From: Fonticula alba ATCC 38817
Taxonomy: Eukaryota; Protista; Nucleariida
DNA length: 28,360 bases
Direction: 5' to 3' (one strand)
Assembly: GCA_000388065.2 (NCBI GenBank)
Contig: KB932208.1
Numbering within the stretch: position 1 is the first letter of the stretch; every line of letters begins with the position of its first letter. This document shows positions 8,862 to 22,635 of the stretch, in pieces. The notes below the pieces were generated by a model that saw only the letters and a list, made by a program, of their open reading frames with translations, was not told the origin of the DNA and did no database searches. Made by a program: the position numbers and the translations under genes.

Positions 8862-10991
8862 GGTCCCGCTCCCTCTGTCCCTCTCTTCGTATGCGCCTTG
8901 CGCGCCCTGTTTTCACATATATATATACACACACACATCATACACGAGCATGCTGAGATACCCCGTCCGCACCTATCCTTGCCTGCTGCCCACACACACA
9001 CACACACACACCTATGCCGGCTGTATCCGTTTGTATGTGTGTTTGCATTTGACTCGCTGTTGCGTGCGGGCGCGGGCGCCCTCCCTCTCCGGGCCTGTCG
9101 CCCCCTCCCCCCCCCCCCCCTTCGCCGCTGCTCCCACCGGAATACACCCCGGCTTGCTGATGCTCTGGCACCCGGCAGGAGAGACGAGGGGGCGGCCACG
9201 CCCGGCGCGCGAGGGCCATCAGGCTGGCAGCGATCGGCACCTGCCACCGGCTCTCTGCCGCGCCCATCCTGACGAGGGGGGGGGGGGGGGGAGAGAGAGA
9301 GAACATTCAGACGGGCGAAGGGCCAACTCTCTCCCGCGTCAAAGAGCACGCTCAGCCGCCGTCCGTCCTGCCGCCTGCACCGCGCCCGGCCCGGTGCAAC
9401 TCCCCGTCCCCCTGCCCGGCCTGTGTGTGTGTGTGTGTGCGCGCGCGCACAGCGCCATCGGGGGAAAAAAATGCCGCCACCTCAACAGACAAAAACACCC
9501 CGGCGAGATGGTGGGCAACTGCAAAAGGCTCACTTCTGCAAATACAGCATGCCGACATTGTAGCATAGGCTGCTACGGGCGCTTTGGAATGGCATTCGTG
9601 AGCATTCATAACGCGCCCCAGCACGGGGTTCCGACGATCATGCCGTCTGCTCTATTAGAACCATGTCCAAGCATTGGGAGTCGGTGAAGGTGGACGCCGG
9701 GCCGCGAGCTCGTTGTTCGGCCTCTCTCTCCCTGGCTCCCGCCCCTCGCGGGCACACTTGCGTCCCCCCGCCGGGCGCCGGCCCGGGCACATGCGCGCTT
9801 TGGCGCGCAGGGAAGAGCATGGGTGCCGGAGCGGGCGGAGAGAAAGGATGCACCGATGGCGGGGGCGGCGCGGGGCGGGGGCGCACACGGTGCCCAAGGA
9901 CCAACCGCCAAGGTGGCCGGGCGGAGCAGTCGGCAGATCGTGGGCACGCACACACACACACACAGACACGCGTGTCTGTGTGTGCGTGTGCCCCAGAAAC
10001 CATGGGGCGACCTGCCGAGAGGTCCCGGGCGGCTCTGGCGCCCAGCCCATATGCACACGGCCGCCCCTGTGGTCTTCCTCCGCCCCCCCCCCCGCGCGCC
10101 CGCTCGCCCGACAAACCGCAAGCCACGCGCCTAGATTGTCGCTGGGCTGCCTGTGGACCTTGCGCCCCGAACGGCATCCCTCCACCTGGGCCGGGGTCGC
10201 GTCAGTCGAGGCGACCCCCGCCTCCCCCCTCCCTCTCCACCTGACAAGAAACGCGCTGCTGGTTCGGCAAACGAGCATCCCTGCTCGGACACCGGTCCGC
10301 CATGACCGAGGAAACCAAGCCATCACGCCGTGCGGTGTATCGTAGCCGCGACCTGGCGCCAGGTGTTCATCGCACCGAAAAGAGTCCCCCGCCCTCGCGC
10401 GGCAGGGCCTCCTGCATGTTTGCCAAAACAATGCACCCGTCCCCCTCCCCCTTGCCATATCACCCCTTCCCCCCCTGCTCCCCTTTTCCCTTCGTCTCCC
10501 CGGGCGGACGCTGCATCCCTTCGCCACTGGCCCCTGCTCTCCCCCCCTCCCTCCCCCCCCTGGCCTACCTTTCCTGTGCACGCCTTTGTGTGAGCATCCA
10601 ATCACTGTCGCTCCGCCGCTCCTCGACCAGCATCCCACCCTCCTCTCCCTTCACAGCACCCCCTGCTGTTCCCCCGGGATCCGGGCCCTGTACGCGATCC
10701 AGCGCATCCCACACACCGACACCGACACCGACACCCACACAGACACAGATACTTGCTGTGTAGATGCACGCCCTTTCTAACCAGAGGCTCCTTCTGACCC
10801 TTTTCCTCTTTTCCATGCCCCCCCCCCCCCTCCCCCGTCCCTCCTACCCGCACGGCTCAGGACACCGGCCGCCGAGTGCGGCCATCTCCGCTTGCTGCTC
10901 CTCGCCCTCCGGGTATTTACTTGCACCCGCCCCTCCCTGCTTGCGCCCCCTCGGCAACCCCTTGCGCATCCCATTGTAGCCCGCCGGCGAC

Positions 10992-13900
10992 ATGGCGCTC
11001 TCACTGCGGTTCGTGCGCCTCCAGCGGGCACACGGGCGCCTGGGGCCATCCTTCGGCCCCGGAGGGGTTACCCCGGCCAGTGTGACCACCGCCGCCGGTG
11101 TCACCGCCTCTGCCGCCGCCGCCGCCGCCGGCAGCCACCGGCCCTACTCCTCGGCTTCGGACCGGAATCCATCCTCCGGCGCTCGGGTCTCGCCCTGGGT
11201 GGCCGGCGGTAAGCCCGGGCCGAAGCAATTCCCCTCGCGTTTCCCCAATGCCGGGCCTCCCCCGGCGGAGGGTGCGGCTGGTCGACCCATGCGGTCCTTT
11301 TCCTCGCCGCAGGGCTCCCCCCCGGAACCGCCGATGGCCGACACCTCCGGGCACAGACGCCCTCCTTGGCACTCGTCCCCCCCAAGACGGTCGAGGCCGC
11401 CAAAGCGGTCGTCCTCCCAGCCACCGATTCCGGAGAACTTCCGTCCAATCATCACTTTCACAAATCCCTCGCGCCCCGGGGACCAGGTCCTCCCCGGGCC
11501 GTCTTTCACTCGGCCGCTCGACGAAACCACCCAATACCGGAGCCGCGACAGTCCGATTGGCCTGCAGTATGACCCTCCGCGCTACCGATACACGATCCCG
11601 CCCGCCCCCCGATCTGGCTCCCCCTCGGGGCCAATGACCCTGAGCGAGGTCCCACCCGAAGCCCGGCGTGCCGTGCACCAGGCCATGGACGACATGAAGG
11701 CCTACCAGCAGGCCACCAGTCCGCACCACCGGGTTTTGAATTATTTGGAGGACACCCATCCGATGCTCATCAATGGCCAGAGTATCTACCGTGATGCGCA
11801 CCTCCCGCAGGCCTTTCGCCAGGCGGCCCTGCGAGCTGTGCCCAATCGCGCCAACCCGACGGCGCCCCTGGCCTTGGAGAACCTCACCCCGGCTCCGCTG
11901 CTGCCAAATGACATCGTCATCCCGCCGGAAGGGAGCCATATCAAGTATCTTCACCGTGGCCAGGCGGCCGCGGCGTCGGTGGCCCGGCTGCGCTTCTCCA
12001 ACCGCCTTGCCCATGGCTTGGGGTCGGATTTGCGGACGGCCTTCTTCGGGGCATCTCAGCCCGCGGCGACCGGGCATGCCGCCGGCACCCGGGGGGCCGC
12101 CCGGGCGGGCCCCTCCCCCACTGCCCTGGCCAACAATGCCCCCCCTGCTGCCAGGGTGAGCGCGCCTCCGCACCTGCCGCCGGCCCGGAAGGCCCGCTTG
12201 CGTGATCTTCCCCACACCCGGCGCGCGGCTCGGCCGCTGGCCCCCTTCATCCTGAGTCCGGCCTCCTGGGTCCGGCACTTGGACCGTGTGAGCAACCTGA
12301 CACCGGCCGGTAGGGCGCAATTGTTGCCGCCGCCCTCGATGCCCCTTCCGACGCCGCTGGCCCCGGGGCCGGCCACACACGGCGGCCAACGCCTGCCCCC
12401 GTTGACGCCCTTCGCCGATACGGCCACCACGCTGGCTGGCTTGCCCTTGCGACAGCGCTTGCGCGCGGCCACCTGGTCCGCCGTGGCCGCCACCACGGTG
12501 GCCCTGGTGTCGCCCTTCTCCCTGCCGCTGACCACGATGGCGGCAACGGCGGCGGCTCTGCTCTCGTCGACCGCCTCGCTGGCTCGCATGCATGATCCCC
12601 TGGTGCCCTCCCCGGCAAGCGGCTTCGGGCGTGACACGTCCCATGTCACGCTCAACAGCATCTGGCCGGCTCCGATGGCCGCCGGGGTGGGGGGGGGGGA
12701 TCCCTCCCTCGCGAATGTCCGCGGCATTGCCCCTGCCCAGGCCGCGTCCAGTGTCCCGGGCCGGCCCGGGCGCCGAGTCACCATGCAGGAAACCGACAAG
12801 CCGACCATGCGCTCGGACTTGCCCGCCCATGCGACCGCCCTGCTGGAATTGCTGGCTCCCTTCAATCGCCTGGTCCAATCGCCGGTCAGCGGGATCCGGA
12901 GCTCGGCCCGCTTTGACCGGTCCACCGGCCAGGCGTTGGTCTACCTGCCGCATGATCGCCACTTCGACTCGCTCCTGTCGCATGTCCCGGCCCCCTGGGA
13001 GTCGCGTCTGTCGCACAATGGTGCCTTGGTCACCCTGTCTGACACGCCGGGCCCAACGCAGGAGGCGGAATTGCTGCCGACCACGAGCGAACTGCCCCTC
13101 TTCAGCCGGGTGTCCCTTCCCTCGCGACTGTCGATGTCGGTCTCCTCATCGACTTTGTCCGCTGCATCTGGTGCGCTGGGGCTTGTCCGGGCCTTCGTTG
13201 GCGCCGCATCCTGTTGCCGGAGGCAGCCGTCTTTTTTCCCCCTCCCGATGCATCCATGTGCCTGTGCTGACTTTGTGTGTGTGTGTGTGTGTGTGTGTCT
13301 GCGTGTGTGCCCCTTTCCTGCCCCCTTTTCAGCCCTGGCCGCCATGGTTCGCCGGCTGGACCAGTCCCACTCGCTGGAGGAAATCAGCCTCTCGGCGAGC
13401 TCCCTTGGTACGGCGTGGAGCATGTGAATCTGCTGTTCTCTCTCTCTCTCTCCTCCCCCTGCCGGGAGAAGGAGGAGCCTGCCGCCCCTGGTCCCTGTCC
13501 CGGCCCCCTTCTAACACACACGCCGTTTGCCCTTCGACCCATGCGCGTACGCGCATCCACACGGCCACACGCGCACCATAGGCTGTCTTGAGGACTCGGA
13601 GGATGTCCTGGTGACGGCTCTCCTCCGGCACCGCATGTCAATGAAATCCCTCTCCCTGCAGGGTGCGCCCCACGACCACATTAGCACCGATATGCAGCCA
13701 CTTGGCAAAAAAAAAAAATTGCGCAGCCCAGCATCTGACACGCGTCCTACCCTGCTCTACTCGAGCAGATATTTCCCTTTCGCCGGAGGGATGCCGGCGG
13801 CTGCTTACCGTGGGCCAGCTTTTGTCCCTCCGCCTGTCCGGGAAGTCCTTCGAATCCTTCAGCTTCCCGGAGAATGATCGCCTGAGGCTGGACCAGCTGT

Positions 13901-16900
13901 CCCTTTCCGGTGCGTGCCCGGCCGGCCAGCAGCCGTGCATCGCTCATGTGCTGCCACACCATTGCGCCGCTCGGCCAGGCCGACTGACTTTTCCCCGGCC
14001 CTGGATTTGCCCCAACATGCTCAGCCTCGTCTGCGTCGCCGGAATTGGTCACGCGAAACCTGGACGCCCTGCCAGCCTCGATCAGTCGCCTCTCCTCTCT
14101 CTGTCTTGAAGGTGTGTTCGGCGGGGGTCTCGCCAGGAAAAAAATGTGTCACCTCCTTCCTTTTGTTGCTCTCCCCGGGCGGCATGTTTCTCGGCGCACC
14201 TTGACTTACACGCGGGCTGGCCCCTCCCCCACAGACCTGGACCTTACTCAGGCACGTCTGAGCATGCTCTTCTACGATTTGAAGCATGCCAACCTTCGGT
14301 CGCTGTCCATCAAGAGTGCGTTCTCCTGGGTGATGCTCCCGTCCGCCGGCTGGCCCGCTCGCTGGCCCGCTTGCTCCCATCGTTCCTTCCCCCTCACCTT
14401 TCGGCGCCCGCCTCTTGCGCGCACATATGCACCCAAAGACTGCTTCCTCGACAAGTCGGCAGTCAAGTCCCTGGCCAGTGGACTGTCGAGTGGCCGGGTC
14501 CCGGTGTCGATCTCCATCTCCTGCCCCACGTCGACGATATCCTCGCTGGATATGGCTCGCATTCTTCTGGCCCGGGTGCCTGCCATTCACAGCTGCTCCA
14601 TCCTGTGTGCGTGGGCTGCTCTTGCGATGCTCTTTCCTGCCCCCATCTTTCTCTCGCTCGCTCCCCCCCCCCCCCTCGTTCTACATCCATGTTGTCGCTT
14701 ACGCTCATGCTTTGCCCCCCCCCATCCTCCCCTCAGCCCACTCCTTGGGGGACATTCCCCACAACCAGGGGGACCTGAACGAAATTCTCACCATGCCCAG
14801 CAGCCTGGCCTTCCTGTCACTGAACTCGCCACACAGTGCGTCCGCAGGGTCTTCCTTTACTTGATTGGGGATGGGGGCCCTTTGCTTTCAAGCGGGCTCG
14901 CTTCCAGTGGAGAGAGAGAGAGAGGGGGGCGGGGGACCTTCATGTCTTCTACTTTCGGCAAAACACCCTCCCCCACTCACCAAACCCCCCTATTGTGTGT
15001 TTCTTCCGCTTGTGCGTGCGCGGCGGCACGCCCCCATAGACACACCCATCTGCTGGGCCCGGGATCAGAACCCCGCGCAGGTGTCCTTCGAGCATATGAT
15101 CCGCACCTCCGATCGGTGGTTTGATCAGTCGGCTTTGTCCGGCTCGCGAGACTCGCCGCGGTTCCTCTTCGCGCCGGGCCCCATTGGCCGGGCCTTCCAC
15201 GAGTGTCTCTTCACCGCGATGCGCCCCACCTCGAGCGATCCCTTCGCCATGCGGATGGACTTGGACGCGCAGCTGGCCTCCATTGATCAGGAGCTCGGGG
15301 CCAATGATGCCGAGAGCGATGGTACGTGGCTGCCTTCGCCTCCACACCCCCCCCCCCCCAGGGGTCCTTTTGCTCGGGACCTTCCCCCTGACGGGCAGGG
15401 CTGCCCTCCTGTCGACCGTCCGCCCTCTGACACATTGCTCTTCCTCCCTCTGCCGCCTAGCCCACGCCCGGCTGCGGGCGGTCCGCCGTGTGATCGAATC
15501 TCGCCGGAGCCTCCTCGAGTCGACGATCTATTCGGAGTGGTTCCGCGAGCGGCGCACGGCCACCTCGCTGCTGAGCAGTGTCTATCTGACGCTGGCCTGT
15601 CGGCCGTCGGGTCTCCGTGCTCTGACAGCCCAGCAGGTGCTGGCCCTGTTTGGGGACCTGGGCCTGAAGCTGCCAGCCACGCGCCTTCGGCAGATGGCCA
15701 CCCCGCCCGACAGCGCGGTCTGGTCATCGGTGTCCTCGCGTCGGCTGAGCGCCTTCCCGGAGAATGTGGCCTCCAGTTCGGATCTCTATATCAATGGGGA
15801 GCTCTTGGCCAATCTGTCGGTCACCGGGCTGGCTCTTCTGACCGGGCTACCGATCGAGGTGTGCCTCCTGTTTGCCCTGCGCCTGGTGCATGCGGCGGTG
15901 TCCGTGCCATCGGACTTGGCCATCCAGCTGTCTGAGCGCCATCCGCACGACCAGAAGCTCGACCAGCAGGCGGCCCTCCTTTCGGCCCTGCTGCCGCCTC
16001 ACCTGCAGTCCCGGTCGTGGCTGCCAGCAGCCGGGGTGTGTGGCGCCGATGTCAAACGCACCCGGCCCATTCCGCTGATGAACTTGGGTGCCGAGCAACT
16101 TAGGGATTGGCTGAGTGGGATTGGCGACCCGGCGGCCGCGGCGGCTCTCTTCCCCTCGAGCACGGCGATGGATGAGCAGGAGGAGGACCGCCAGGCGGAT
16201 GTTAGCCCGCTGCCGGCCCTGCGCCTGCTGGCCTACCAGTCGCTGCACTTTGACCGGCAGCATGTCGAGGAGCGCGAGCGCCAGGTGGCCCAACTGGGCG
16301 CCAGCCTTCGGGCGGCCTTCCCCGGGCAGGCGCGGTATACCCGCCTGCAGGTGGCGTCCACCATTTTGGAGGACAACCCCACGTCCGGGTCCCAGGAGCA
16401 GCACGTTGCGGAGGGCGATCGGTCGAAATTGGCCCTGCTGGCCTCGGTGACCGGGCTGCACCCGGCGACGGATGTTCTGGCCATGGAGGCCCTTTGGCCC
16501 GGCCGGACGGCCGGGCATGCACTGTCCTCCACTCAGCCGGAGCTCTTTGATACGGAGCCCCGGGTGGCCGAGGCCATCCGGATGGCTGTCGCGAGCGAGG
16601 TTCACCGGGGACAGCTGCCCGACTGGGTGGCCGGGTTCCCGATGATGGTCAAGCTTGGCGCCATCATCGATACTTACCGCACTGCGCTGGCTATCCCGCC
16701 CTTCCAGTACCTGAATCCCCGCGCACAGTTGGTGCATCGTCTTCCTCCGGACGACAATCCGGAGACCGACGACAACTCCAACGAGCCTGGGCCTGATGCG
16801 AGCCCCGCCGAGGCGCCCCCCCTCACCCCTGCCCAGGCAGCCCTGCTGCGCTTCGACCCGGAGGCCACTTCCAGCTCGTACACCTGGCTCGAGGCGTTAA

Positions 16901-16908
16901 CTGAGTAG
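10992..16908 (+). CDS. Hypothetical ~1546-aa protein: presequence-like N-terminus, Pro-rich region, hydrophobic segment, RNI-like leucine-rich repeats, C-terminal helical domain
   Basis: Exons 10992-13170, 13333-13407, 13582-13662, 13769-13909, 14025-14111, 14235-14315, 14439-14606, 14737-14835, 15040-15321 and 15461-16908 total 4641 nt in frame. All nine introns are GT-AG. LxxLxL motifs: SLEEISLS, SMKSLSLQG, QLLSLRLSG, RLDQLSLSG, RLSSLCLEG, NLRSLSIKNCFLDKSAVKSLASGL, SLAFLSLN. Codon third positions are strongly G/C in this frame where I checked (~12320-12790). Confidence 0.75.
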
Positions 16909-17245
16909 CCTCCTCCCCTCCTCTCCCCCTCCCCCACCATCCCCTCCGGGACTGCGCCGAAGGGAGGAGAAAGTGAGAGCGAGAGAACACCGCAGCCGAT
17001 CAGCCGGGTGCCCCCCCACCCACCCCCTGGCCTCCTTGCTGTATTCTGCCGTCCTTTCTCTCTCTCTCCCTCCCTCTCTGTCTTCCACACCCCCGAGCCC
17101 CTTTGGGGCCCTTTCTTCGCATCTCCCCGGATCAGTATCCCACTTTGTCCTTGTAGAACCTCCCCTCCCTCTCCCATCACCCTAGAGCCAGTGTATGGTG
17201 ACACCATGCGCCATAGGGCACGATGTCTCCCCCCCCCCCCCCCCC

Positions 17246-17529
17246 NNNNNNNNNNNNNNNNNNNNNNNNNNNNNNNNNNNNNNNNNNNNNNNNNNNNNNN
17301 NNNNNNNNNNNNNNNNNNNNNNNNNNNNNNNNNNNNNNNNNNNNNNNNNNNNNNNNNNNNNNNNNNNNNNNNNNNNNNNNNNNNNNNNNNNNNNNNNNNN
17401 NNNNNNNNNNNNNNNNNNNNNNNNNNNNNNNNNNNNNNNNNNNNNNNNNNNNNNNNNNNNNNNNNNNNNNNNNNNNNNNNNNNNNNNNNNNNNNNNNNNN
17501 NNNNNNNNNNNNNNNNNNNNNNNNNNNNN
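17246..17529. other. Assembly gap (284 N), flanked by C runs
   Basis: N stretch read directly. Confidence 0.99.
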
Positions 17530-17825
17530 CCCCGCCGCCACTCTCTGGTGCACCGGCGGCGCCGTGTCCCGCGGACCAGCCCACCCCCATTACACCATTG
17601 TGCGACCCCCTCCCTCCTTTCGATTCTCCAGGGGGGGGGGGGGGGAGTGATGTGTGTGTGTGTGTCTTTTTCTCCTCTCTGCGCGCACATCCCCCCTCTG
17701 CACTCCGGCGAGGAGAGAGCGACAGAGAGAGAGAGAGAGATCGGGGGAGAAAGAAACAGAGGGGGCGGGGGGAATGGGAGATATATGCCCACGCGGACTG
17801 GGACGTGCCACACCAGGCGCAGACA

Positions 17826-20800
17826 TCAGAAGATGTCGAAATCGTCGTCCAGGGGAGCGGCGCTCTTGGGCTTCTTGGCCTTGGAAGAAGTCTTCTTGGC
17901 CTTGGGAGGGGCCGCCGAAGAGGCAGGAGCCGCTGCCGCCGCCGCCGCCGCCGCAGGAGCAGGGGCAGCAGCGGACGTGGTCTTCTTTTTGCGGCTCGAA
18001 GAGGAGGTCACCTGCTTGGCCGGCGCGTCACCGAAGATATCCAGGATATCAGCATCGGCGACGGCGGCGGCCGGCTTCTTGGCGGGCTTCGCGGTCTCCT
18101 TGGCCGGGGCGTTGGCAGCGGGAGCCGCGGAGGAAGCCACGGGGGTGGATTTGGGTGCCGGAGAGGCGGCCGCGGCCGCCGGCTTGGCCGAGGAGGCGGC
18201 AGCAGCAGCAGCAGCAGCAGCGGCCGGCTTGGCCGGAGAGGCAGCAGCAGCAGCGGCGGCGGTGGTGGCGGCAGCGGCGGCCGGCTGCTTGGGGGCAGGC
18301 TTGGCCGCCGGCACGGTCTTCGTGGCAAAGAGCAGATCATCATCATCATCGCTGTCCGAGAGGGCCAGCACCTTGGCCGCCGGCTTCTTGGCCGCCGCAG
18401 TGGGGGCCACCGCAGCAGGCACCGGCGTGACAACCGGCAGGACGGCAGGGCTCGAGGCGACGGCCGCCGAAGTCCCGGACGAGGCGCCCGCCACGGCGGC
18501 CACATGCGACGGCAGGCGCCGGGCAGCCATGCGCGGCCGACCACGCGCCGCCGACTTGAGCACAGTCGGCGCGGCCGGCGGCGCGGCCGGGTTTGTCGAG
18601 GCACCGGTGCCGACGCTGGACGGGGCAGCTGCCATGTCGGCGGGGTCGGTGCTGCGGCTGCTGGACGAAACGGCACCAGGGCGCTTGGGCGGCATGCCCA
18701 TGCCCATGATGGGGATGGCGGCGGCATTGTCACCGAAGCGACTGGCCAGGAGGCTGCCAGCGCGCTTGGACGCCACACCGTCACTCGACGACGATGACCC
18801 GAACCCCCCATCTGAGGAGGAATGCCCGCTGTCCGAGACATTCCCGCCGGGCGGCGCCAGGGGATCCTCCTCGGAGGCGGGCTGGGCAGGCTTGCGTGGG
18901 CGTGGGGCAGGACCGCCCATGAAGATCGGCGGCTCCTTGCCGCCAAACAAGCCGGACACCAGCTTGTTCTTGGCCACGGCGCCGCCGGCCGCGGCCGGAG
19001 GAGGAGTGCCGGAGGCGGCCGCGGCCGGCTTGGCCGCCGGGACACTGACTGACGCCAGCTTGGAGAAGGGGTCATCGCTGTCCGAGTCCGAGTCCAGCAG
19101 GACCACACGCGAGGTGACCACGGGCTTGGCGGCAGCCGGGGGCGGAGTGGCCACCTTGGCCGCGGCCGACGGGGCCTTGCTAGAAGAGCCAAAGGCAAAG
19201 TCGTCCTCATCATCGGAGGAGAAAAGCCCGGAGGGCTTGGGCCTGGCTGCAACCGGGGCACTGGTGGCCGGCTGGGCGGCCTTCTTCGAGGCGGCCAGGA
19301 AGGGGTCATCGCTCTCGTCGCCACTGTCGGACAAAGTGAGGATGGCCGGGCTGCGAGCCGGAGCCGGAGCCGGAGTGGGGGTGGGGGCGGTCGCAGGCGC
19401 GGGCGCGGGCTCAGCCACCGGGACTGGGGCAGGTGCCGAGGCGGCGGGCTCCGGGGCGGTCACCTTCGCCGGGGCAGCCGAGGTCGGGGCAGATACCGGG
19501 GCGGGCTTCGCCGCAGACAGGATATCATCATCGTCATCGTCATCATCATCGTCGAACATGGAAATGGGGCGCCGGGCGGCGAAGGATGGCTTGGTGGCCG
19601 CCGCAGGAGCCGCCGCAGGAGCCGCCGCGGCCGCTGGCTTCAGCTTGCTGAAAATATCGTCATCCTCATCGTCATCATCGTCGTCGAAGAAGCTGATGGG
19701 TCTCCGGGCGGCCGGGGCCGCGGCCGCGGCGACAGGCGCGGTAGCCGGGGCCGCGGCAGCAGCCGGAGCCGCGGCAGGGGCCGGAGCCGAGGCAGAAGCA
19801 GCGGGAGCGGGCTCGGCAACAGGGGCCGCAGCGGGTGCGGGCGACTTCGCCGCAGCCGGGGCAGCGAAGAAGTCGTCATCGTCATCCTCCCCGTCGGAGA
19901 ACAGCAGGCCGATCTTCTTCTTGGCCGGGGCCGCAGCCGCGACCGTCGCAACAGGGGCCGCGGCCGCGGCAGCCGGAGTCGCAGTCTCGGTCGCCGCCGG
20001 GGCCGCGGCAGGGGGCGCGGCCGACTTCGGAGCGAAGAGGGACAGGTCGTCATCCTCACCGTCGGACCCATCGAACAGGCTCTTTTGGGCAGCGGGCACG
20101 GCCCGGGCCGCGGCGGCAGCGGTGGTCGTGGTCTTCTTCGGGGCAAACAGGTCGTCGTCATCGTCCTCATCATCGTAGTCAAAGAAGTTCTGACGGCAAA
20201 GTAGGAGACGAGGCGGGGCGGGACGGGGCGGGGCGGGGNNNNNNNNNNNNNNNNNNNNNNNNNNNNNNNNNNNNNNNNNNNNNNNNNNNNNNNNNNNNNN
20301 NNNNNNNNNNNNNNNNNNNNNNNNNNNNNNNNNNNNNNNNNNNNNNNNNNNNNNNNNNNNNNNNNNNNNNNNNNNNNNNNNNNNNNNNNNNNNNNNNNNN
20401 NNNNNNNNNNNNNNNNNNNNNNNNNNNNNNNNNNNNNNNNNNNNNNNNNNNNNNNNNNNNNNNNNNNNNNNNNNNNNNNNNNNNNNNNNNNNNNNNNNNN
20501 NNNNNNNNNNNNNNNNNNNNNNNNNNNNNNNNNNNNNNCGCACCGTCCCTGGGCCCTCCACGCAAGCGCAGAACAAGCACGTAACTCTTCGAGCGTCGGA
20601 GGATGTGTGTGGGCGGGGCGGGGCGGGGCGGGGTAGGGCGGGGCAGGGCAGGGCAGGGCGGGGCGGGGCAGGGCAGGGCAGGGCGGGGCAGGGCAGGGCG
20701 TTAGCGAGGAAGAGAGACCGAGAAGGGGACAGGCAGAGGGCCGCCGAAGGGGAGACAAAGCAACATACCCGGGAGAAGCGGGACTTGGCCGGAGCTGCGG

Positions 20801-22635
20801 ACACGTTGGTGCGAGCCTGAGGCACGGCCCCGTCCGAGTCGGCATCAGAGTCGACCCCGGCGAAGCGGACCTGGGGCGCGGCCGCAGGGGCAGCAGCCGG
20901 AGCCGGACCATCGGCGGTGTCAGAGGCAGGGACAGTGCCATCGGAGCCAGGGGCGGCGCCGGCGGCGGCGCCGGCGGCGGCGCCGGCGGTGGCGGTGGCG
21001 GCCTCGTCGTCGGTGGCCCCCTCGTCAGTGGGAGGGCCACCGGCAGCGGCAGCAGCCCCGCCGGCAAGCGAGTTGGCCAGCATGGCGGCCAGACTGCTGC
21101 GGTCGGCAATCGGGCCGGTGTCGATGACCGACAGGGGGCCCTCCGGCGAGGGGGGCCGGACGGGCTCATCGCCGGTGGTCGGAGTCGGGGGGACAGAGCT
21201 GGTGGGGGTGGTGCCCGGCAGGGGGGGCGGCGGCGGCGGCGGCGGCGGCGGACCACCAGCACCCGGGGGTGGAGGAGGCGGCGGCGGCGGCGGCGGCGGC
21301 GGCACCCCACCGGCCGGAACATCCGCCGGGGAGCCGGCCACGGGGCCGGAGGCCGCGGGGGCTGCCTGCGTGACTGACGGGATGACCATCGGCTCCAGGA
21401 AGGAGGCCATGTTGGTTCGGAGGTAGGATGCCGTGCCAATGACGAAGGGCAGCGGCCGATGCGAGTAGGAGCTCTGTGTATGATGGCGAGGCGGCGTGGG
21501 AAGTGGCGGGAAAGGGAGCAGGGAGGGGGGAGACAGGGATCAGCATGGGGCCTGGCCACTGAAAGTGTGGAGAGGAGGGCCAGGGCAAAGAGGGAGAGAG
21601 AGAGAGAGAGAGAAAGAAAGAAAACGGGAGGCAAGAGTCGGGGGGGGGGGAGGAAGTCGCACGGTCAGCGAGGCCGATACAGCGCCCGGGGTGGCGGCAT
21701 CATCCGGCTCGGCGATGGTCGGGCTGGTCGGGACATTGGGCTGCATGAAGGTGCTCTCGAAGACCGAGAAAGCGTCCGCCAGGGCGGTGGTGTACTTGGG
21801 GATGAGGATGGCATCGAGCTGCTCGCGAGTTGGCGGCTTGGCCGGGTCCAGCTGCTCGGTCCGGGACTCGGGCTTGGCCGGGGCCAGGCCCACGCGAACG
21901 GGCGAGAAGTCGGTCGGGGTGACGACGCGCTTTGGGTAGGGGGGCGAGGTGGGGACGCACGGGGACCGTTAGCGAGGGAGGCAGGGGAGGAGTGGGGCGG
22001 AAACGAATGGGTGGGATGGGGAAGGGAAACGCGCTGAGACAGGAAGGGGGGGTGGGAGGGGAACACGGTACGTTTTCGACGAACTGACGGTTGGCGATCA
22101 TGTTGAACTCGTTGAAGGAGTTCTGCACCAGGGTCGAGGCGTCCTGGGCAGAGAAGATCAGGTTGTCCAGTCGGGAATTCACCTCGGAAGTCCGGGCGAT
22201 GAGACGCTCACTGAACTGCTCGAGATATAGTCGAAGCTGTGGGCGGGGGACGGGGAACGGGGGACGGGGGGGGGGGGAGGGAGTTGGATGGTGAGTGACT
22301 GCAGCATGCCCGGGTGGAGGAGCAGGAACAGAGGCGAGGGGGAGGAGACCGGAGGAGACACGCACCCCGGCATCACTGGCGAGAGTCCATTGGTCACTGC
22401 CGACAGCGGCACGCATCTGCTCAAAAGACCAGGGCTTCTCCCAGACAGCAAGCCCGGCTGCGGAGGGAGGCGAGAGAAGGAGGCACGAAGGGGGGGGGGG
22501 GAGGAGTCAGAGGAGGGGGAAGCCAGGGGAGGAGGAAACCAGGGAGGGGCCAGGGGGGATGGGGCCGAGGAAGGTGCACATACAGCCGTCACCAGCCGAC
22601 CCGGCCACGGGGGCGCTCGGATCACTGGAAGACAT
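17826..22635 (-). CDS. WASHC2: WASH complex subunit 2 (FAM21), ~1214 aa if no exon lies in the gap
   Basis: Exons 22635-22584, 22457-22366, 22236-22072, 21929-21663, 21473-20769 and 20189-17826. The FAM21 head matches as recalled: WEKPWSFEQMR...WTLASDAG~WERPWSVEEIR...WSLAADAG; LYLEQFSERLIARTSEV...VQNSFNEFNMIANRQFVENRV~LQFLQEFSQQTISRTHEI...[47 protein letters not shown]~YIDRPLPYLIGS. The tail carries about 10 L-F-acidic (LFa)-like motifs and a CPI-like LKSAARGRPRMAARRLPS. Confidence 0.92.
20239..20538. other. Assembly gap (300 N) inside WASHC2 intron 5
   Basis: N stretch flanked by GGGGC/GGGCA repeats. Confidence 0.99.
20611..20700. repeat. GGGGC/GGGCA pentamer tandem repeat (also 20212-20238 on the other side of the gap), intronic
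   Basis: gggcggggcg...gggcagggca... read directly. Confidence 0.9.

What the first reader, a model, noticed from the sequence alone, without database searches (positions are those of the whole stretch)
13171..15460. Exon-per-repeat LRR cassette: nine consecutive phase-1 introns and symmetric exons
Seen: all nine introns are phase 1, and the eight internal exons are 75, 81, 141, 87, 81, 168, 99 and 282 nt, all multiples of 3. Most encode about one (25-33 aa) or two (47-56 aa) RNI-type repeats. The intron repeatedly falls just after the LxxLxL strand (SLSLQ/G, QLSLS/G, SLCLE/G, SLSIK/N). No other gene in the window shows this except the short all-phase-0 NDUFS5-like gene; the others have mixed phases. 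Established: symmetric, repeat-sized LRR exons occur in ribonuclease inhibitor and NLRP genes and allow frame-preserving skipping and exon duplication. Inference: the array grew by exon duplication, and any exon could be skipped in frame. This would give a modular, possibly splice-diversified recognition surface in a protist-like genome. It is the best candidate here for an undescribed system.
Basis: partly seen in the sequence, partly recalled or inferred. Interest (0 to 1): 0.75.

Follow-up and report, generated by a model that had tools for sequence, protein, structure and literature searches.

The report
Exon-per-repeat LRR gene in Fonticula
A real, already annotated gene of the slime-mould-like amoeba Fonticula alba has its leucine-rich-repeat part cut into small in-frame exons of about one repeat each; this is a known way of building repeat proteins and recurs at several other genes of the same genome, so it is ordinary rather than a new system.

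Summary
Nine GT-AG introns in 13171-15460 are all phase 1, and the eight exons between them (75, 81, 141, 87, 81, 168, 99, 282 nt) are all multiples of three. The model reproduces the public protein XP_009497093.1 (Fonticula alba H696_04952, hypothetical protein) exactly. Five of the seven introns inside the repeat array split the codon one residue after an LxxLxL strand (P about 6e-6).

- In-frame skipping is arithmetically possible: all 45 possible joins are stop-free.
- No RNA data could be reached.
- The exons and introns share no residual DNA similarity.
- The gene is a single-copy orphan with a very degenerate RI-type LRR. Pfam finds nothing, and only the first two to three repeats match a solved RI-type LRR (E 6.6e-5).

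It is not a new system. The scan had already noted the same build on other DNA of this genome. I confirmed five further loci with arrays of phase-1 84/87-nt LRR exons cut at the same repeat position. Exon-LRR modularity is published for human NLR/RNH1 genes and for Tetrahymena.

Verdict: a decayed member of a known kind, of low to moderate interest.

The parts
10302..13170 (+). 5' part of gene H696_04952 as annotated: exons 10302-10364, 10657-10689, 10861-10875, 11025-11293 and 11387-13170. Introns are phase 0, 0, 0 and 2. The product is mostly Pro/Ala/Ser-rich with no recognisable domain.
   Evidence: The exon set translates exactly to P0001. Pfam finds nothing. There is no paralogue in the genome, and the word search found nothing.
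13171..13332 (+). Phase-1 intron, 162 nt, donor GTGCGC. It contains a (TG)18 run and lies about position 15 of a putative cap repeat.
13333..13407 (+). Exon of 75 nt: helix of the cap repeat plus the strand LEEISLS of repeat 1. The next intron falls at repeat position 12.
13582..13662 (+). Exon of 81 nt: the rest of repeat 1 plus the strand MKSLSLQ of repeat 2. It ends one base into the position-8 codon.
   Evidence: It aligns to RI-type designed LRR 4r5d_A.
13769..13909 (+). Exon of 141 nt spanning two short repeats (24 + 23 aa). It ends after LDQLSLS at position 8.
14025..14111 (+). Exon of 87 nt, one repeat. It ends after LSSLCLE at position 8.
14235..14315 (+). Exon of 81 nt, one repeat. 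It ends after LRSLSIK at position 8.
14439..14606 (+). Exon of 168 nt, two repeats (28 + 28 aa). It starts with Cys at LRR position 9 and ends after IHSCSIL at position 8.
14737..14835 (+). Exon of 99 nt, the last repeat. It ends at position 11 after LAFLSLNSPH.
15040..15321 (+). Exon of 282 nt. It is not a repeat exon but a linker or C-terminal cap region.
   Evidence: The word search with this exon found nothing.
15461..16908 (+). Last exon, 1448 nt to the stop codon. It encodes a C-terminal region of 481 aa with no detectable relatives.
   Evidence: The only real match among 1.84 billion representative proteins is the gene's own product. There is no Pfam hit and no usable ESM Atlas hit.
13408..15460 (+). 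The remaining eight phase-1 introns: 13408-13581, 13663-13768, 13910-14024, 14112-14234, 14316-14438, 14607-14736, 14836-15039 and 15322-15460. They are 106-204 nt, have donors GT[GA][CT]G and acceptors YAG/AAG, and are C-rich with simple repeats.

Best explanation
This is the central part of a real, single-copy Fonticula alba gene (H696_04952, 1541 aa, 'hypothetical protein').

Shown:
- About 250 residues form a degenerate ribonuclease-inhibitor-type leucine-rich-repeat array of roughly nine repeats of 23-31 aa.
- The array is encoded by seven symmetric phase-1 exons.
- In five repeats the intron splits the codon at LRR position 8, one residue after the LxxLxL strand and just before the Asn/Cys position. 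Each such exon therefore carries the helix of one repeat plus the strand of the next.
- The same exon module occurs in arrays at five or more other loci of this genome: 84/87 nt, phase 1-1, starting at Asn/Cys and ending LxxLxLx.

Inferred:
- The cassette descends from tandem duplication or shuffling of that intron-flanked module. It then diverged beyond sequence recognition, lost two introns (giving the 141- and 168-nt exons) and kept differently placed introns at its edges.
- The array most likely acts as a curved protein-binding scaffold inside an otherwise orphan protein.
- The symmetric exons are a historical footprint that permits in-frame skipping but does not demonstrate it.
For: - The exon model equals the public protein exactly.
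- Coding periodicity is present in every exon and in no intron, and the donors share one consensus.
- Five of seven array introns sit at the same repeat position and phase, P about 6e-6.
- phmmer against solved structures matches residues 699-787 to the designed RI-type LRR 4r5d_A at E 6.6e-5, with register LxxLxLxx(N/C)xL.
- The ESM Atlas neighbours of residues 712-1062 are LRR_6 / LRR_TMOD-LMOD clusters at 0.90-0.93.
- Periodicity: a chain of six LxxLxL motifs at 22-31 aa spacing, and ten LxxLxLxxxxL motifs, each with P 0.006 against shuffles.
- Five other loci hold 2 to at least 7 phase-1 LRR exons cut at the same place, against 0-0.2 expected per 9 kb. 14 of those 24 exons start with N or C.
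- All 45 possible joins are stop-free.
- The literature describes frame-preserving exon-LRR modularity (PMC6642158, PMC3848420, PMC6564038).
Against: - Pfam finds no LRR family in the full protein even at E 10.
- A six-frame LRR_6 scan of the genome does not touch this gene.
- A profile built from the other Fonticula LRR exons scores this array no better than shuffles.
- phmmer against other Fonticula LRR open frames finds nothing.
- Repeats 3-9 are therefore LRR by pattern only, and the fold was not predicted.
- No exon or intron pair keeps significant DNA similarity, so duplication is inferred from position and phase alone.
- The public model is a pipeline prediction; I could reach no transcript evidence.
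Confidence: 0.8

Rival explanations
1. One reading: the cassette is a splice-diversified recognition surface. Exon skipping would produce a repertoire of LRR isoforms with different binding faces.
For: All exons are phase 1-1 and every one of the 45 possible joins stays open. Skipping a one-repeat exon removes exactly one helix-plus-strand unit. Human NLRP3 uses such skipping (PMC6642158). One acceptor is weak (AAAG at 14438), and an in-frame alternative acceptor lies 24 nt downstream.
Against: No transcript data exist here. The gene is single-copy with no paralogues. The repeats are old and decayed, not a dynamic array. Symmetry follows automatically from duplication of one intron-flanked unit and needs no selection for splicing.
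Confidence: 0.1
2. The shared intron position comes from parallel intron gain at a favoured site in each repeat, not from duplication of an exon-intron unit.
For: Exons and introns have no residual similarity. Exon sizes are uneven (75-168 nt), and two array introns are at other positions.
Against: The exonic contexts at the five junctions differ (agg|at, ccg|cc, aag|ac, aga|ac, tgt|cc), so no common proto-splice site is visible. The same position and phase recur in many exons at five other loci whose exons are plainly related RI-type repeats, which duplication explains more simply.
Confidence: 0.12
3. The region is not an LRR solenoid but a Leu/Ser-rich region of another fold, or disordered, and the resemblance is compositional.
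For: There is no Pfam hit. The profile from genuine Fonticula LRR exons fails. The plain LxxLxL count is not enriched over shuffles (14 versus 10.4, P 0.14). The region is 19% Ser and 18% Leu.
Against: The PDB match to an RI-type LRR at E 6.6e-5 has the correct register. The motif spacing is periodic (P 0.006). The nearest ESM clusters with a Pfam family are all LRR. The intron position is identical to that of bona fide LRR exons of the same genome.
Confidence: 0.12
4. The gene model is an artefact: some junctions are wrong, and the phase run results from forcing an open frame.
For: The 5' end differs between them, and one annotated intron (11294-11386) looks like coding sequence.
Against: Two independent models agree on all nine junctions. 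Stop codons in all three frames force splicing. The donors match one consensus. GC3 periodicity switches on and off at the boundaries. Open frames in other frames and on the minus strand have no family hits.
Confidence: 0.04

Closest known systems
Exon-LRR modularity of human RI-type LRR genes (NLRP3 and other NLRs, RNH1; Hoss et al. 2019, PMC6642158) and one LRR per exon in NLRC5 (PMC3848420)
   Same: Both have RI-type repeats of 28-29 aa. Exons cover one or two repeats. LRR exons are strictly frame-preserving. The exon border lies at a fixed place in the repeat, so each exon carries parts of two neighbouring repeats and skipping keeps the solenoid register.
   Different: Here the border is the codon at position 8, just after the strand. 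The papers place the animal border 'within the beta-sheet' and at position 6 of the RI-like consensus, so the positions probably differ; this was not verified on sequence. Exon sizes here are uneven (75-168 nt, not 171 or 84). There is no NACHT or other known domain, the repeats are degenerate, and no splicing evidence exists.
Other phase-1 one-LRR-per-exon genes of Fonticula alba (L050 C7:1349838-1351093, L051 C4:2801523-2803227, L052 C3:1498681-1502584, L053 C3:1815545-1815919, L055 C3:2986553-2988260)
   Same: They share the same phase, the same cut (split codon at position 8, exon ending LxxLxLx), the same donor type GT[AG][CT]G and similar intron sizes.
   Different: Those exons are clean RI-type repeats of 84/87/90 nt, and 14 of 24 start with N or C. 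In this gene only one of the five keeps Cys at position 9, and its repeats are not recognised by a profile of the others.
Tetrahymena LRR genes with arrays of exactly 90-bp exons (Xiong et al. 2019, PMC6564038)
   Same: A protist LRR gene built from symmetric repeat-sized exons with an extreme intron-phase bias, interpreted as exon duplication or shuffling.
   Different: Tetrahymena has phase 2, exactly 90 bp, tens of thousands of exons in thousands of young genes, and links to retrotransposons. Here there is phase 1, variable sizes and one old single-copy gene.
Designed RI-type LRR proteins 4r5d / 4r6g (solved structures)
   Same: These are the only significant sequence match. Residues 699-787 align to the alternating 28/29-aa RI-type consensus.
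   Different: The match covers two to three repeats only, and the rest of the array has no significant match.

Membership tests
RI-type (RNI-like) leucine-rich repeat domain (Pfam LRR_6 PF13516, clan LRR) | Significant match to a Pfam LRR model | tested here: not met
   hmmscan of P0001 finds 0 families at E up to 10. The single exons give 0. The six-frame PF13516 scan of the genome has no hit in this gene.
RI-type (RNI-like) leucine-rich repeat domain (Pfam LRR_6 PF13516, clan LRR) | Tandem units of about 28-29 aa with LxxLxLxx(N/C)xL | tested here: inconclusive
   Nine strands by eye at 23-31 aa spacing. A chain of six is significant (P 0.006) and LxxLxLxxxxL is enriched (P 0.006). However, N/C at position 9 is kept in only one or two repeats, and the plain motif count is not enriched.
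RI-type (RNI-like) leucine-rich repeat domain (Pfam LRR_6 PF13516, clan LRR) | Sequence similarity to a solved RI-type LRR | tested here: met
   4r5d_A at E 6.6e-5 and 4r6g_A at E 0.056, over residues 699-787 only.
RI-type (RNI-like) leucine-rich repeat domain (Pfam LRR_6 PF13516, clan LRR) | Horseshoe alpha/beta solenoid fold | not testable with these tools
   P0001 (1541 aa) exceeds the 1200-aa limit of structure prediction. The joined LRR segment has no reference, so that step was left out. The ESM Atlas holds no model.
Exon-LRR modular gene architecture (as in NLR/RNH1) | LRR exons all frame-preserving (symmetric phases) | tested here: met
   All eight internal exons are multiples of 3 between phase-1 introns. 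All 45 possible joins are stop-free.
Exon-LRR modular gene architecture (as in NLR/RNH1) | Exon length equals one or two repeats, with the border at a fixed repeat position | tested here: met
   Seven of eight exons are 25-33 or 47-56 codons long. Five of seven array introns are at position 8, P about 6e-6.
Exon-LRR modular gene architecture (as in NLR/RNH1) | Observed exon-skipping isoforms | not testable with these tools
   No transcript data were reachable.
Fonticula alba phase-1 LRR exon class | Exon starts after a split codon at position 8 and ends LxxLxLx plus one base, with donor GT[AG][CT]G | tested here: met
   Five exons of this gene pass the same scan that finds the arrays at five other loci. 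For the 168-nt exon the scan reports the shorter 144-nt in-frame variant that ends at the same donor.
Fonticula alba phase-1 LRR exon class | Sequence similarity to the class consensus (N/C at the first codon, GxxGaxxLaxxL helix) | tested here: not met
   The A3 profile gives its best window hit at exon 1 with only 5.8 bits. Its score on the whole array is no better than shuffles.
NLR (NACHT-LRR) receptors | NACHT/NB-ARC NTPase domain N-terminal to the LRRs | tested here: not met
   No Pfam family appears anywhere in P0001.

The most novel reading that the evidence does not exclude
Fonticula alba (Holomycota) may have built a whole set of RI-type LRR genes from one phase-1 exon module. Its boundary (position 8/9, after the strand) differs from the boundary reported for animal NLR genes (position about 6, in the strand). 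That would make exon-LRR modularity an independent invention outside animals. It might still be used for exon shuffling or regulated exon skipping, with this orphan gene as an old, decayed product.
Probability: 0.2. Interest if true: 0.45.

Novelty: new member of a known kind. Interest (0 to 1): 0.25.

Why it matters
By itself this gene adds one more example of a known rule: repeat proteins that grow by duplicating an intron-flanked unit end up with symmetric, repeat-sized exons.

The modest value lies at genome level. A relative of fungi uses the same trick as animal NLR genes and ciliate LRR genes, apparently with its own cut site. A proper census could therefore say whether exon-LRR modularity is ancestral in opisthokonts or arose repeatedly.

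There is also a practical lesson. Six-frame domain scans miss such genes, because the intron cuts the motif.

Tried and rejected
- Pfam on the single exons, the large exons and the full protein found nothing.
- Word searches with exon 0, with exon 8 and with residues 560-1062 of P0001 returned nothing or only the protein itself.
- The big representative search with the last exon returned the protein itself plus one chance bacterial LRR hit at E 3e-4.
- Searches of the own genome for paralogues of the first and last exon found none.
- I first read the PF13516 six-frame scan as showing that other LRR genes are unsplit. I rejected that reading: the scan cannot see repeats cut at position 8, and open frames in this GC-rich DNA run through introns.
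- MAFFT alignment of this gene's own exon peptides (A1) was too poor to use as a profile.
- Profiles A2 and A3 from other Fonticula LRR units found new split-exon loci but not this gene. The genome tool scores only about 19 first-look candidates, so a full count of such loci was not possible.
- Local DNA alignment of introns and exons gave no pair above z about 3.
- The ESM Atlas gave no usable hit for the C-terminal region.
- Rfam found nothing in the window.
- Open frames in other frames and on the minus strand had no family hits.
- Literature searches did not yield an explicit statement of intron phase for animal LRR exons.
Full report
**What is there.** The window is GC-rich eukaryotic DNA. 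The eight exons between them are 75, 81, 141, 87, 81, 168, 99 and 282 nt.

Three features of the sequence support these junctions.
- Every exon has high GC3 (0.68-0.88) and lower GC2, while the introns show no periodicity.
- Eight of the eleven GT[AG]CG sites on this strand in 13100-15500 are the model's donors. The ninth donor is GTGTGT.
- Stop codons in all three frames make splicing unavoidable.

The introns carry (TG)n, (TC)n and (GA)n runs and C-tracts.

**Identity of the gene.** A search with the last exon against 1.84 billion representative proteins returned one real match, P0001 (1541 aa, 100% identity). The only other hit is a chance match to a bacterial repeat protein. P0001 is Fonticula alba hypothetical protein H696_04952 (XP_009497093.1, KCV68661.1) and is a singleton cluster.

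A 14-exon model translates exactly to P0001. The public annotation therefore agrees with all nine junctions. It adds four upstream introns of phases 0, 0, 0 and 2, so the phase-1 run is a property of the repeat region, not of the whole gene.

**How the searches were run.** Exons were searched one by one by reference, and the only full-length sequence searched was the database's own P0001. Exons were concatenated only inside local scripts: to check frame, phases and identity to P0001, and once to list LxxLxL motifs.

Structure prediction of the repeat segment was left out. The joined segment has no reference, and P0001 exceeds the 1200-residue limit.

**Is it an LRR?** The evidence is mixed. 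Against it:
- Pfam finds nothing in P0001 even at E 10.
- phmmer against other LRR open frames of the same genome finds nothing.

For it:
- phmmer against solved structures matches residues 699-787 to the designed RI-type LRR 4r5d_A (E 6.6e-5), in the register LxxLxLxx(N/C)xL.
- ESM Atlas neighbours of residues 712-1062 include LRR_6 / TMOD-LMOD-type clusters at 0.90-0.93. The two nearest clusters carry no common family, and every neighbour that has a Pfam family is LRR. This is a lead only.
- LxxLxL strands form a chain of six at 22-31 residue spacing (P 0.006).
- The 11-residue LxxLxLxxxxL motif occurs 10 times against 3.9 expected (P 0.006).

By eye there are about nine repeats. I accept an RI-type LRR, but a very degenerate one.

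**Where the introns fall.** In P0001 numbering the split codons are residues 722, 747, 774, 821, 850, 877, 933, 966 and 1060.
- Five of them (774, 821, 850, 877, 933) lie exactly one residue after an LxxLxL motif. This is LRR position 8, just before the Asn/Cys position.
- Two sit at positions 12 and 11 of the first and last repeat.
- Two are outside the array.

Five of seven at one position has P about 6e-6 on position alone. Each exon thus carries the helix of one repeat and the strand of the next. The 141- and 168-nt exons span two units, and the 282-nt exon is not a repeat.

**Is it unique?** No. Earlier notes of this scan on other DNA of the same genome report the same build. I tested that claim independently.

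A profile of LRR units from unsplit Fonticula genes, permuted to run from position 9 to position 7 of the next repeat, picked up hits in short open frames. I then scanned each locus for exons that met all of these conditions:
- preceded by YAG;
- 60-200 nt long and a multiple of 3;
- open in the phase-1 frame;
- a peptide ending in LxxLxLx;
- followed by GT[AG][CT]G.

The scan finds arrays at five other loci:

| Locus | Place | Strand | Exons |
|---|---|---|---|
| L050 | C7:1349838-1351093 | + | 5 |
| L051 | C4:2801523-2803227 | + | 5 |
| L052 | C3:1498681-1502584 | + | at least 7 |
| L053 | C3:1815545-1815919 | - | 2 |
| L055 | C3:2986553-2988260 | - | 4 |

Shuffled sequence gives 0-0.2 such exons per 9 kb. 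14 of these 24 exons begin with Asn or Cys, which the scan did not require. The exons are mostly 84, 87 or 90 nt, or twice that.

The window's gene uses the same cut and phase, but a profile of those exons does not recognise its repeats. The genome tool scores only a handful of first-look candidates, so five is a lower bound.

My first reading of the LRR_6 scan was that other LRR genes are unsplit. That was unsafe, because the intron cuts the motif and open frames run through introns in this DNA.

**Origin and function.** No exon or intron pair keeps significant DNA similarity, and unit identities are 6-29%. The first and last exons have no paralogues. Duplication of an intron-flanked unit is therefore inferred from shared position and phase and from the genome-wide module, not from residual similarity, and it must be old.

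The exonic contexts of the five junctions differ, which argues against a common proto-splice site and parallel gain. All 45 possible joins among the phase-1 exons avoid stop codons, so in-frame skipping is possible. No transcript data were reachable (look-up of encoding contigs closed), so splice diversification remains conjecture.

The flanking parts of the protein have no relatives or domains. Beyond 'protein-binding repeat scaffold in an orphan protein', function cannot be narrowed.

**Comparison with the known.**
- Frame-preserving exon-LRR modularity is published for human RI-type genes. These have 171-bp exons of two repeats and the border at a fixed place 'within the beta-sheet' (PMC6642158).
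- NLRC5 has one LRR per exon, with exons starting at position 6 of the RI-like consensus (PMC3848420).
- Tetrahymena has arrays of exactly 90-bp phase-2 LRR exons ascribed to exon shuffling. That paper also cites brown-algal exon-shuffled LRR receptors (PMC6564038).

The Fonticula cut at position 8/9 seems to differ from the animal one. I could not check that on sequence.

**Verdict.** This is a new, decayed member of a known kind, already annotated, and one of several such genes in its genome.

Noticed in passing
window 11294-11386: Annotated intron 4 is 93 nt, a multiple of three and open in frame. It has GC3 of 0.78, like coding sequence, and a poor donor (GTCCTT against the local GTGCGT type). 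It may be coding sequence or a retained or optional intron.
   Followed up: partly
window 10302-11024: The public model starts at ATG 10302 and uses micro-exons of 33 and 15 nt. This is a possible alternative start, and it was not resolved.
   Followed up: partly
L050 (C7:1349838-1351093), L051 (C4:2801523-2803227), L052 (C3:1498681-1502584), L053 (C3:1815545-1815919), L055 (C3:2986553-2988260): Five other F. alba loci carry arrays of phase-1 RI-type LRR exons of 84/87/90 nt (or double), all cut at repeat position 8. They are much better conserved than the window's gene.
   Followed up: partly
own genome: A six-frame Pfam LRR_6 scan misses split-exon LRR genes, because the intron cuts the 24-position motif at position 8. 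In addition, 'open frame' lengths in this 67% GC genome run through introns, so they do not show that a gene is unsplit.
   Followed up: yes
window 14460-14462: An in-frame alternative acceptor (YAG) lies 24 nt inside the 168-nt exon, downstream of the weak annotated acceptor AAAG at 14438. Its use would remove eight residues.
   Followed up: no
window 17001-18000 and 20001-21000: There are two marked GC dips (0.46 and 0.51 against about 0.68 elsewhere), downstream of the gene.
   Followed up: no
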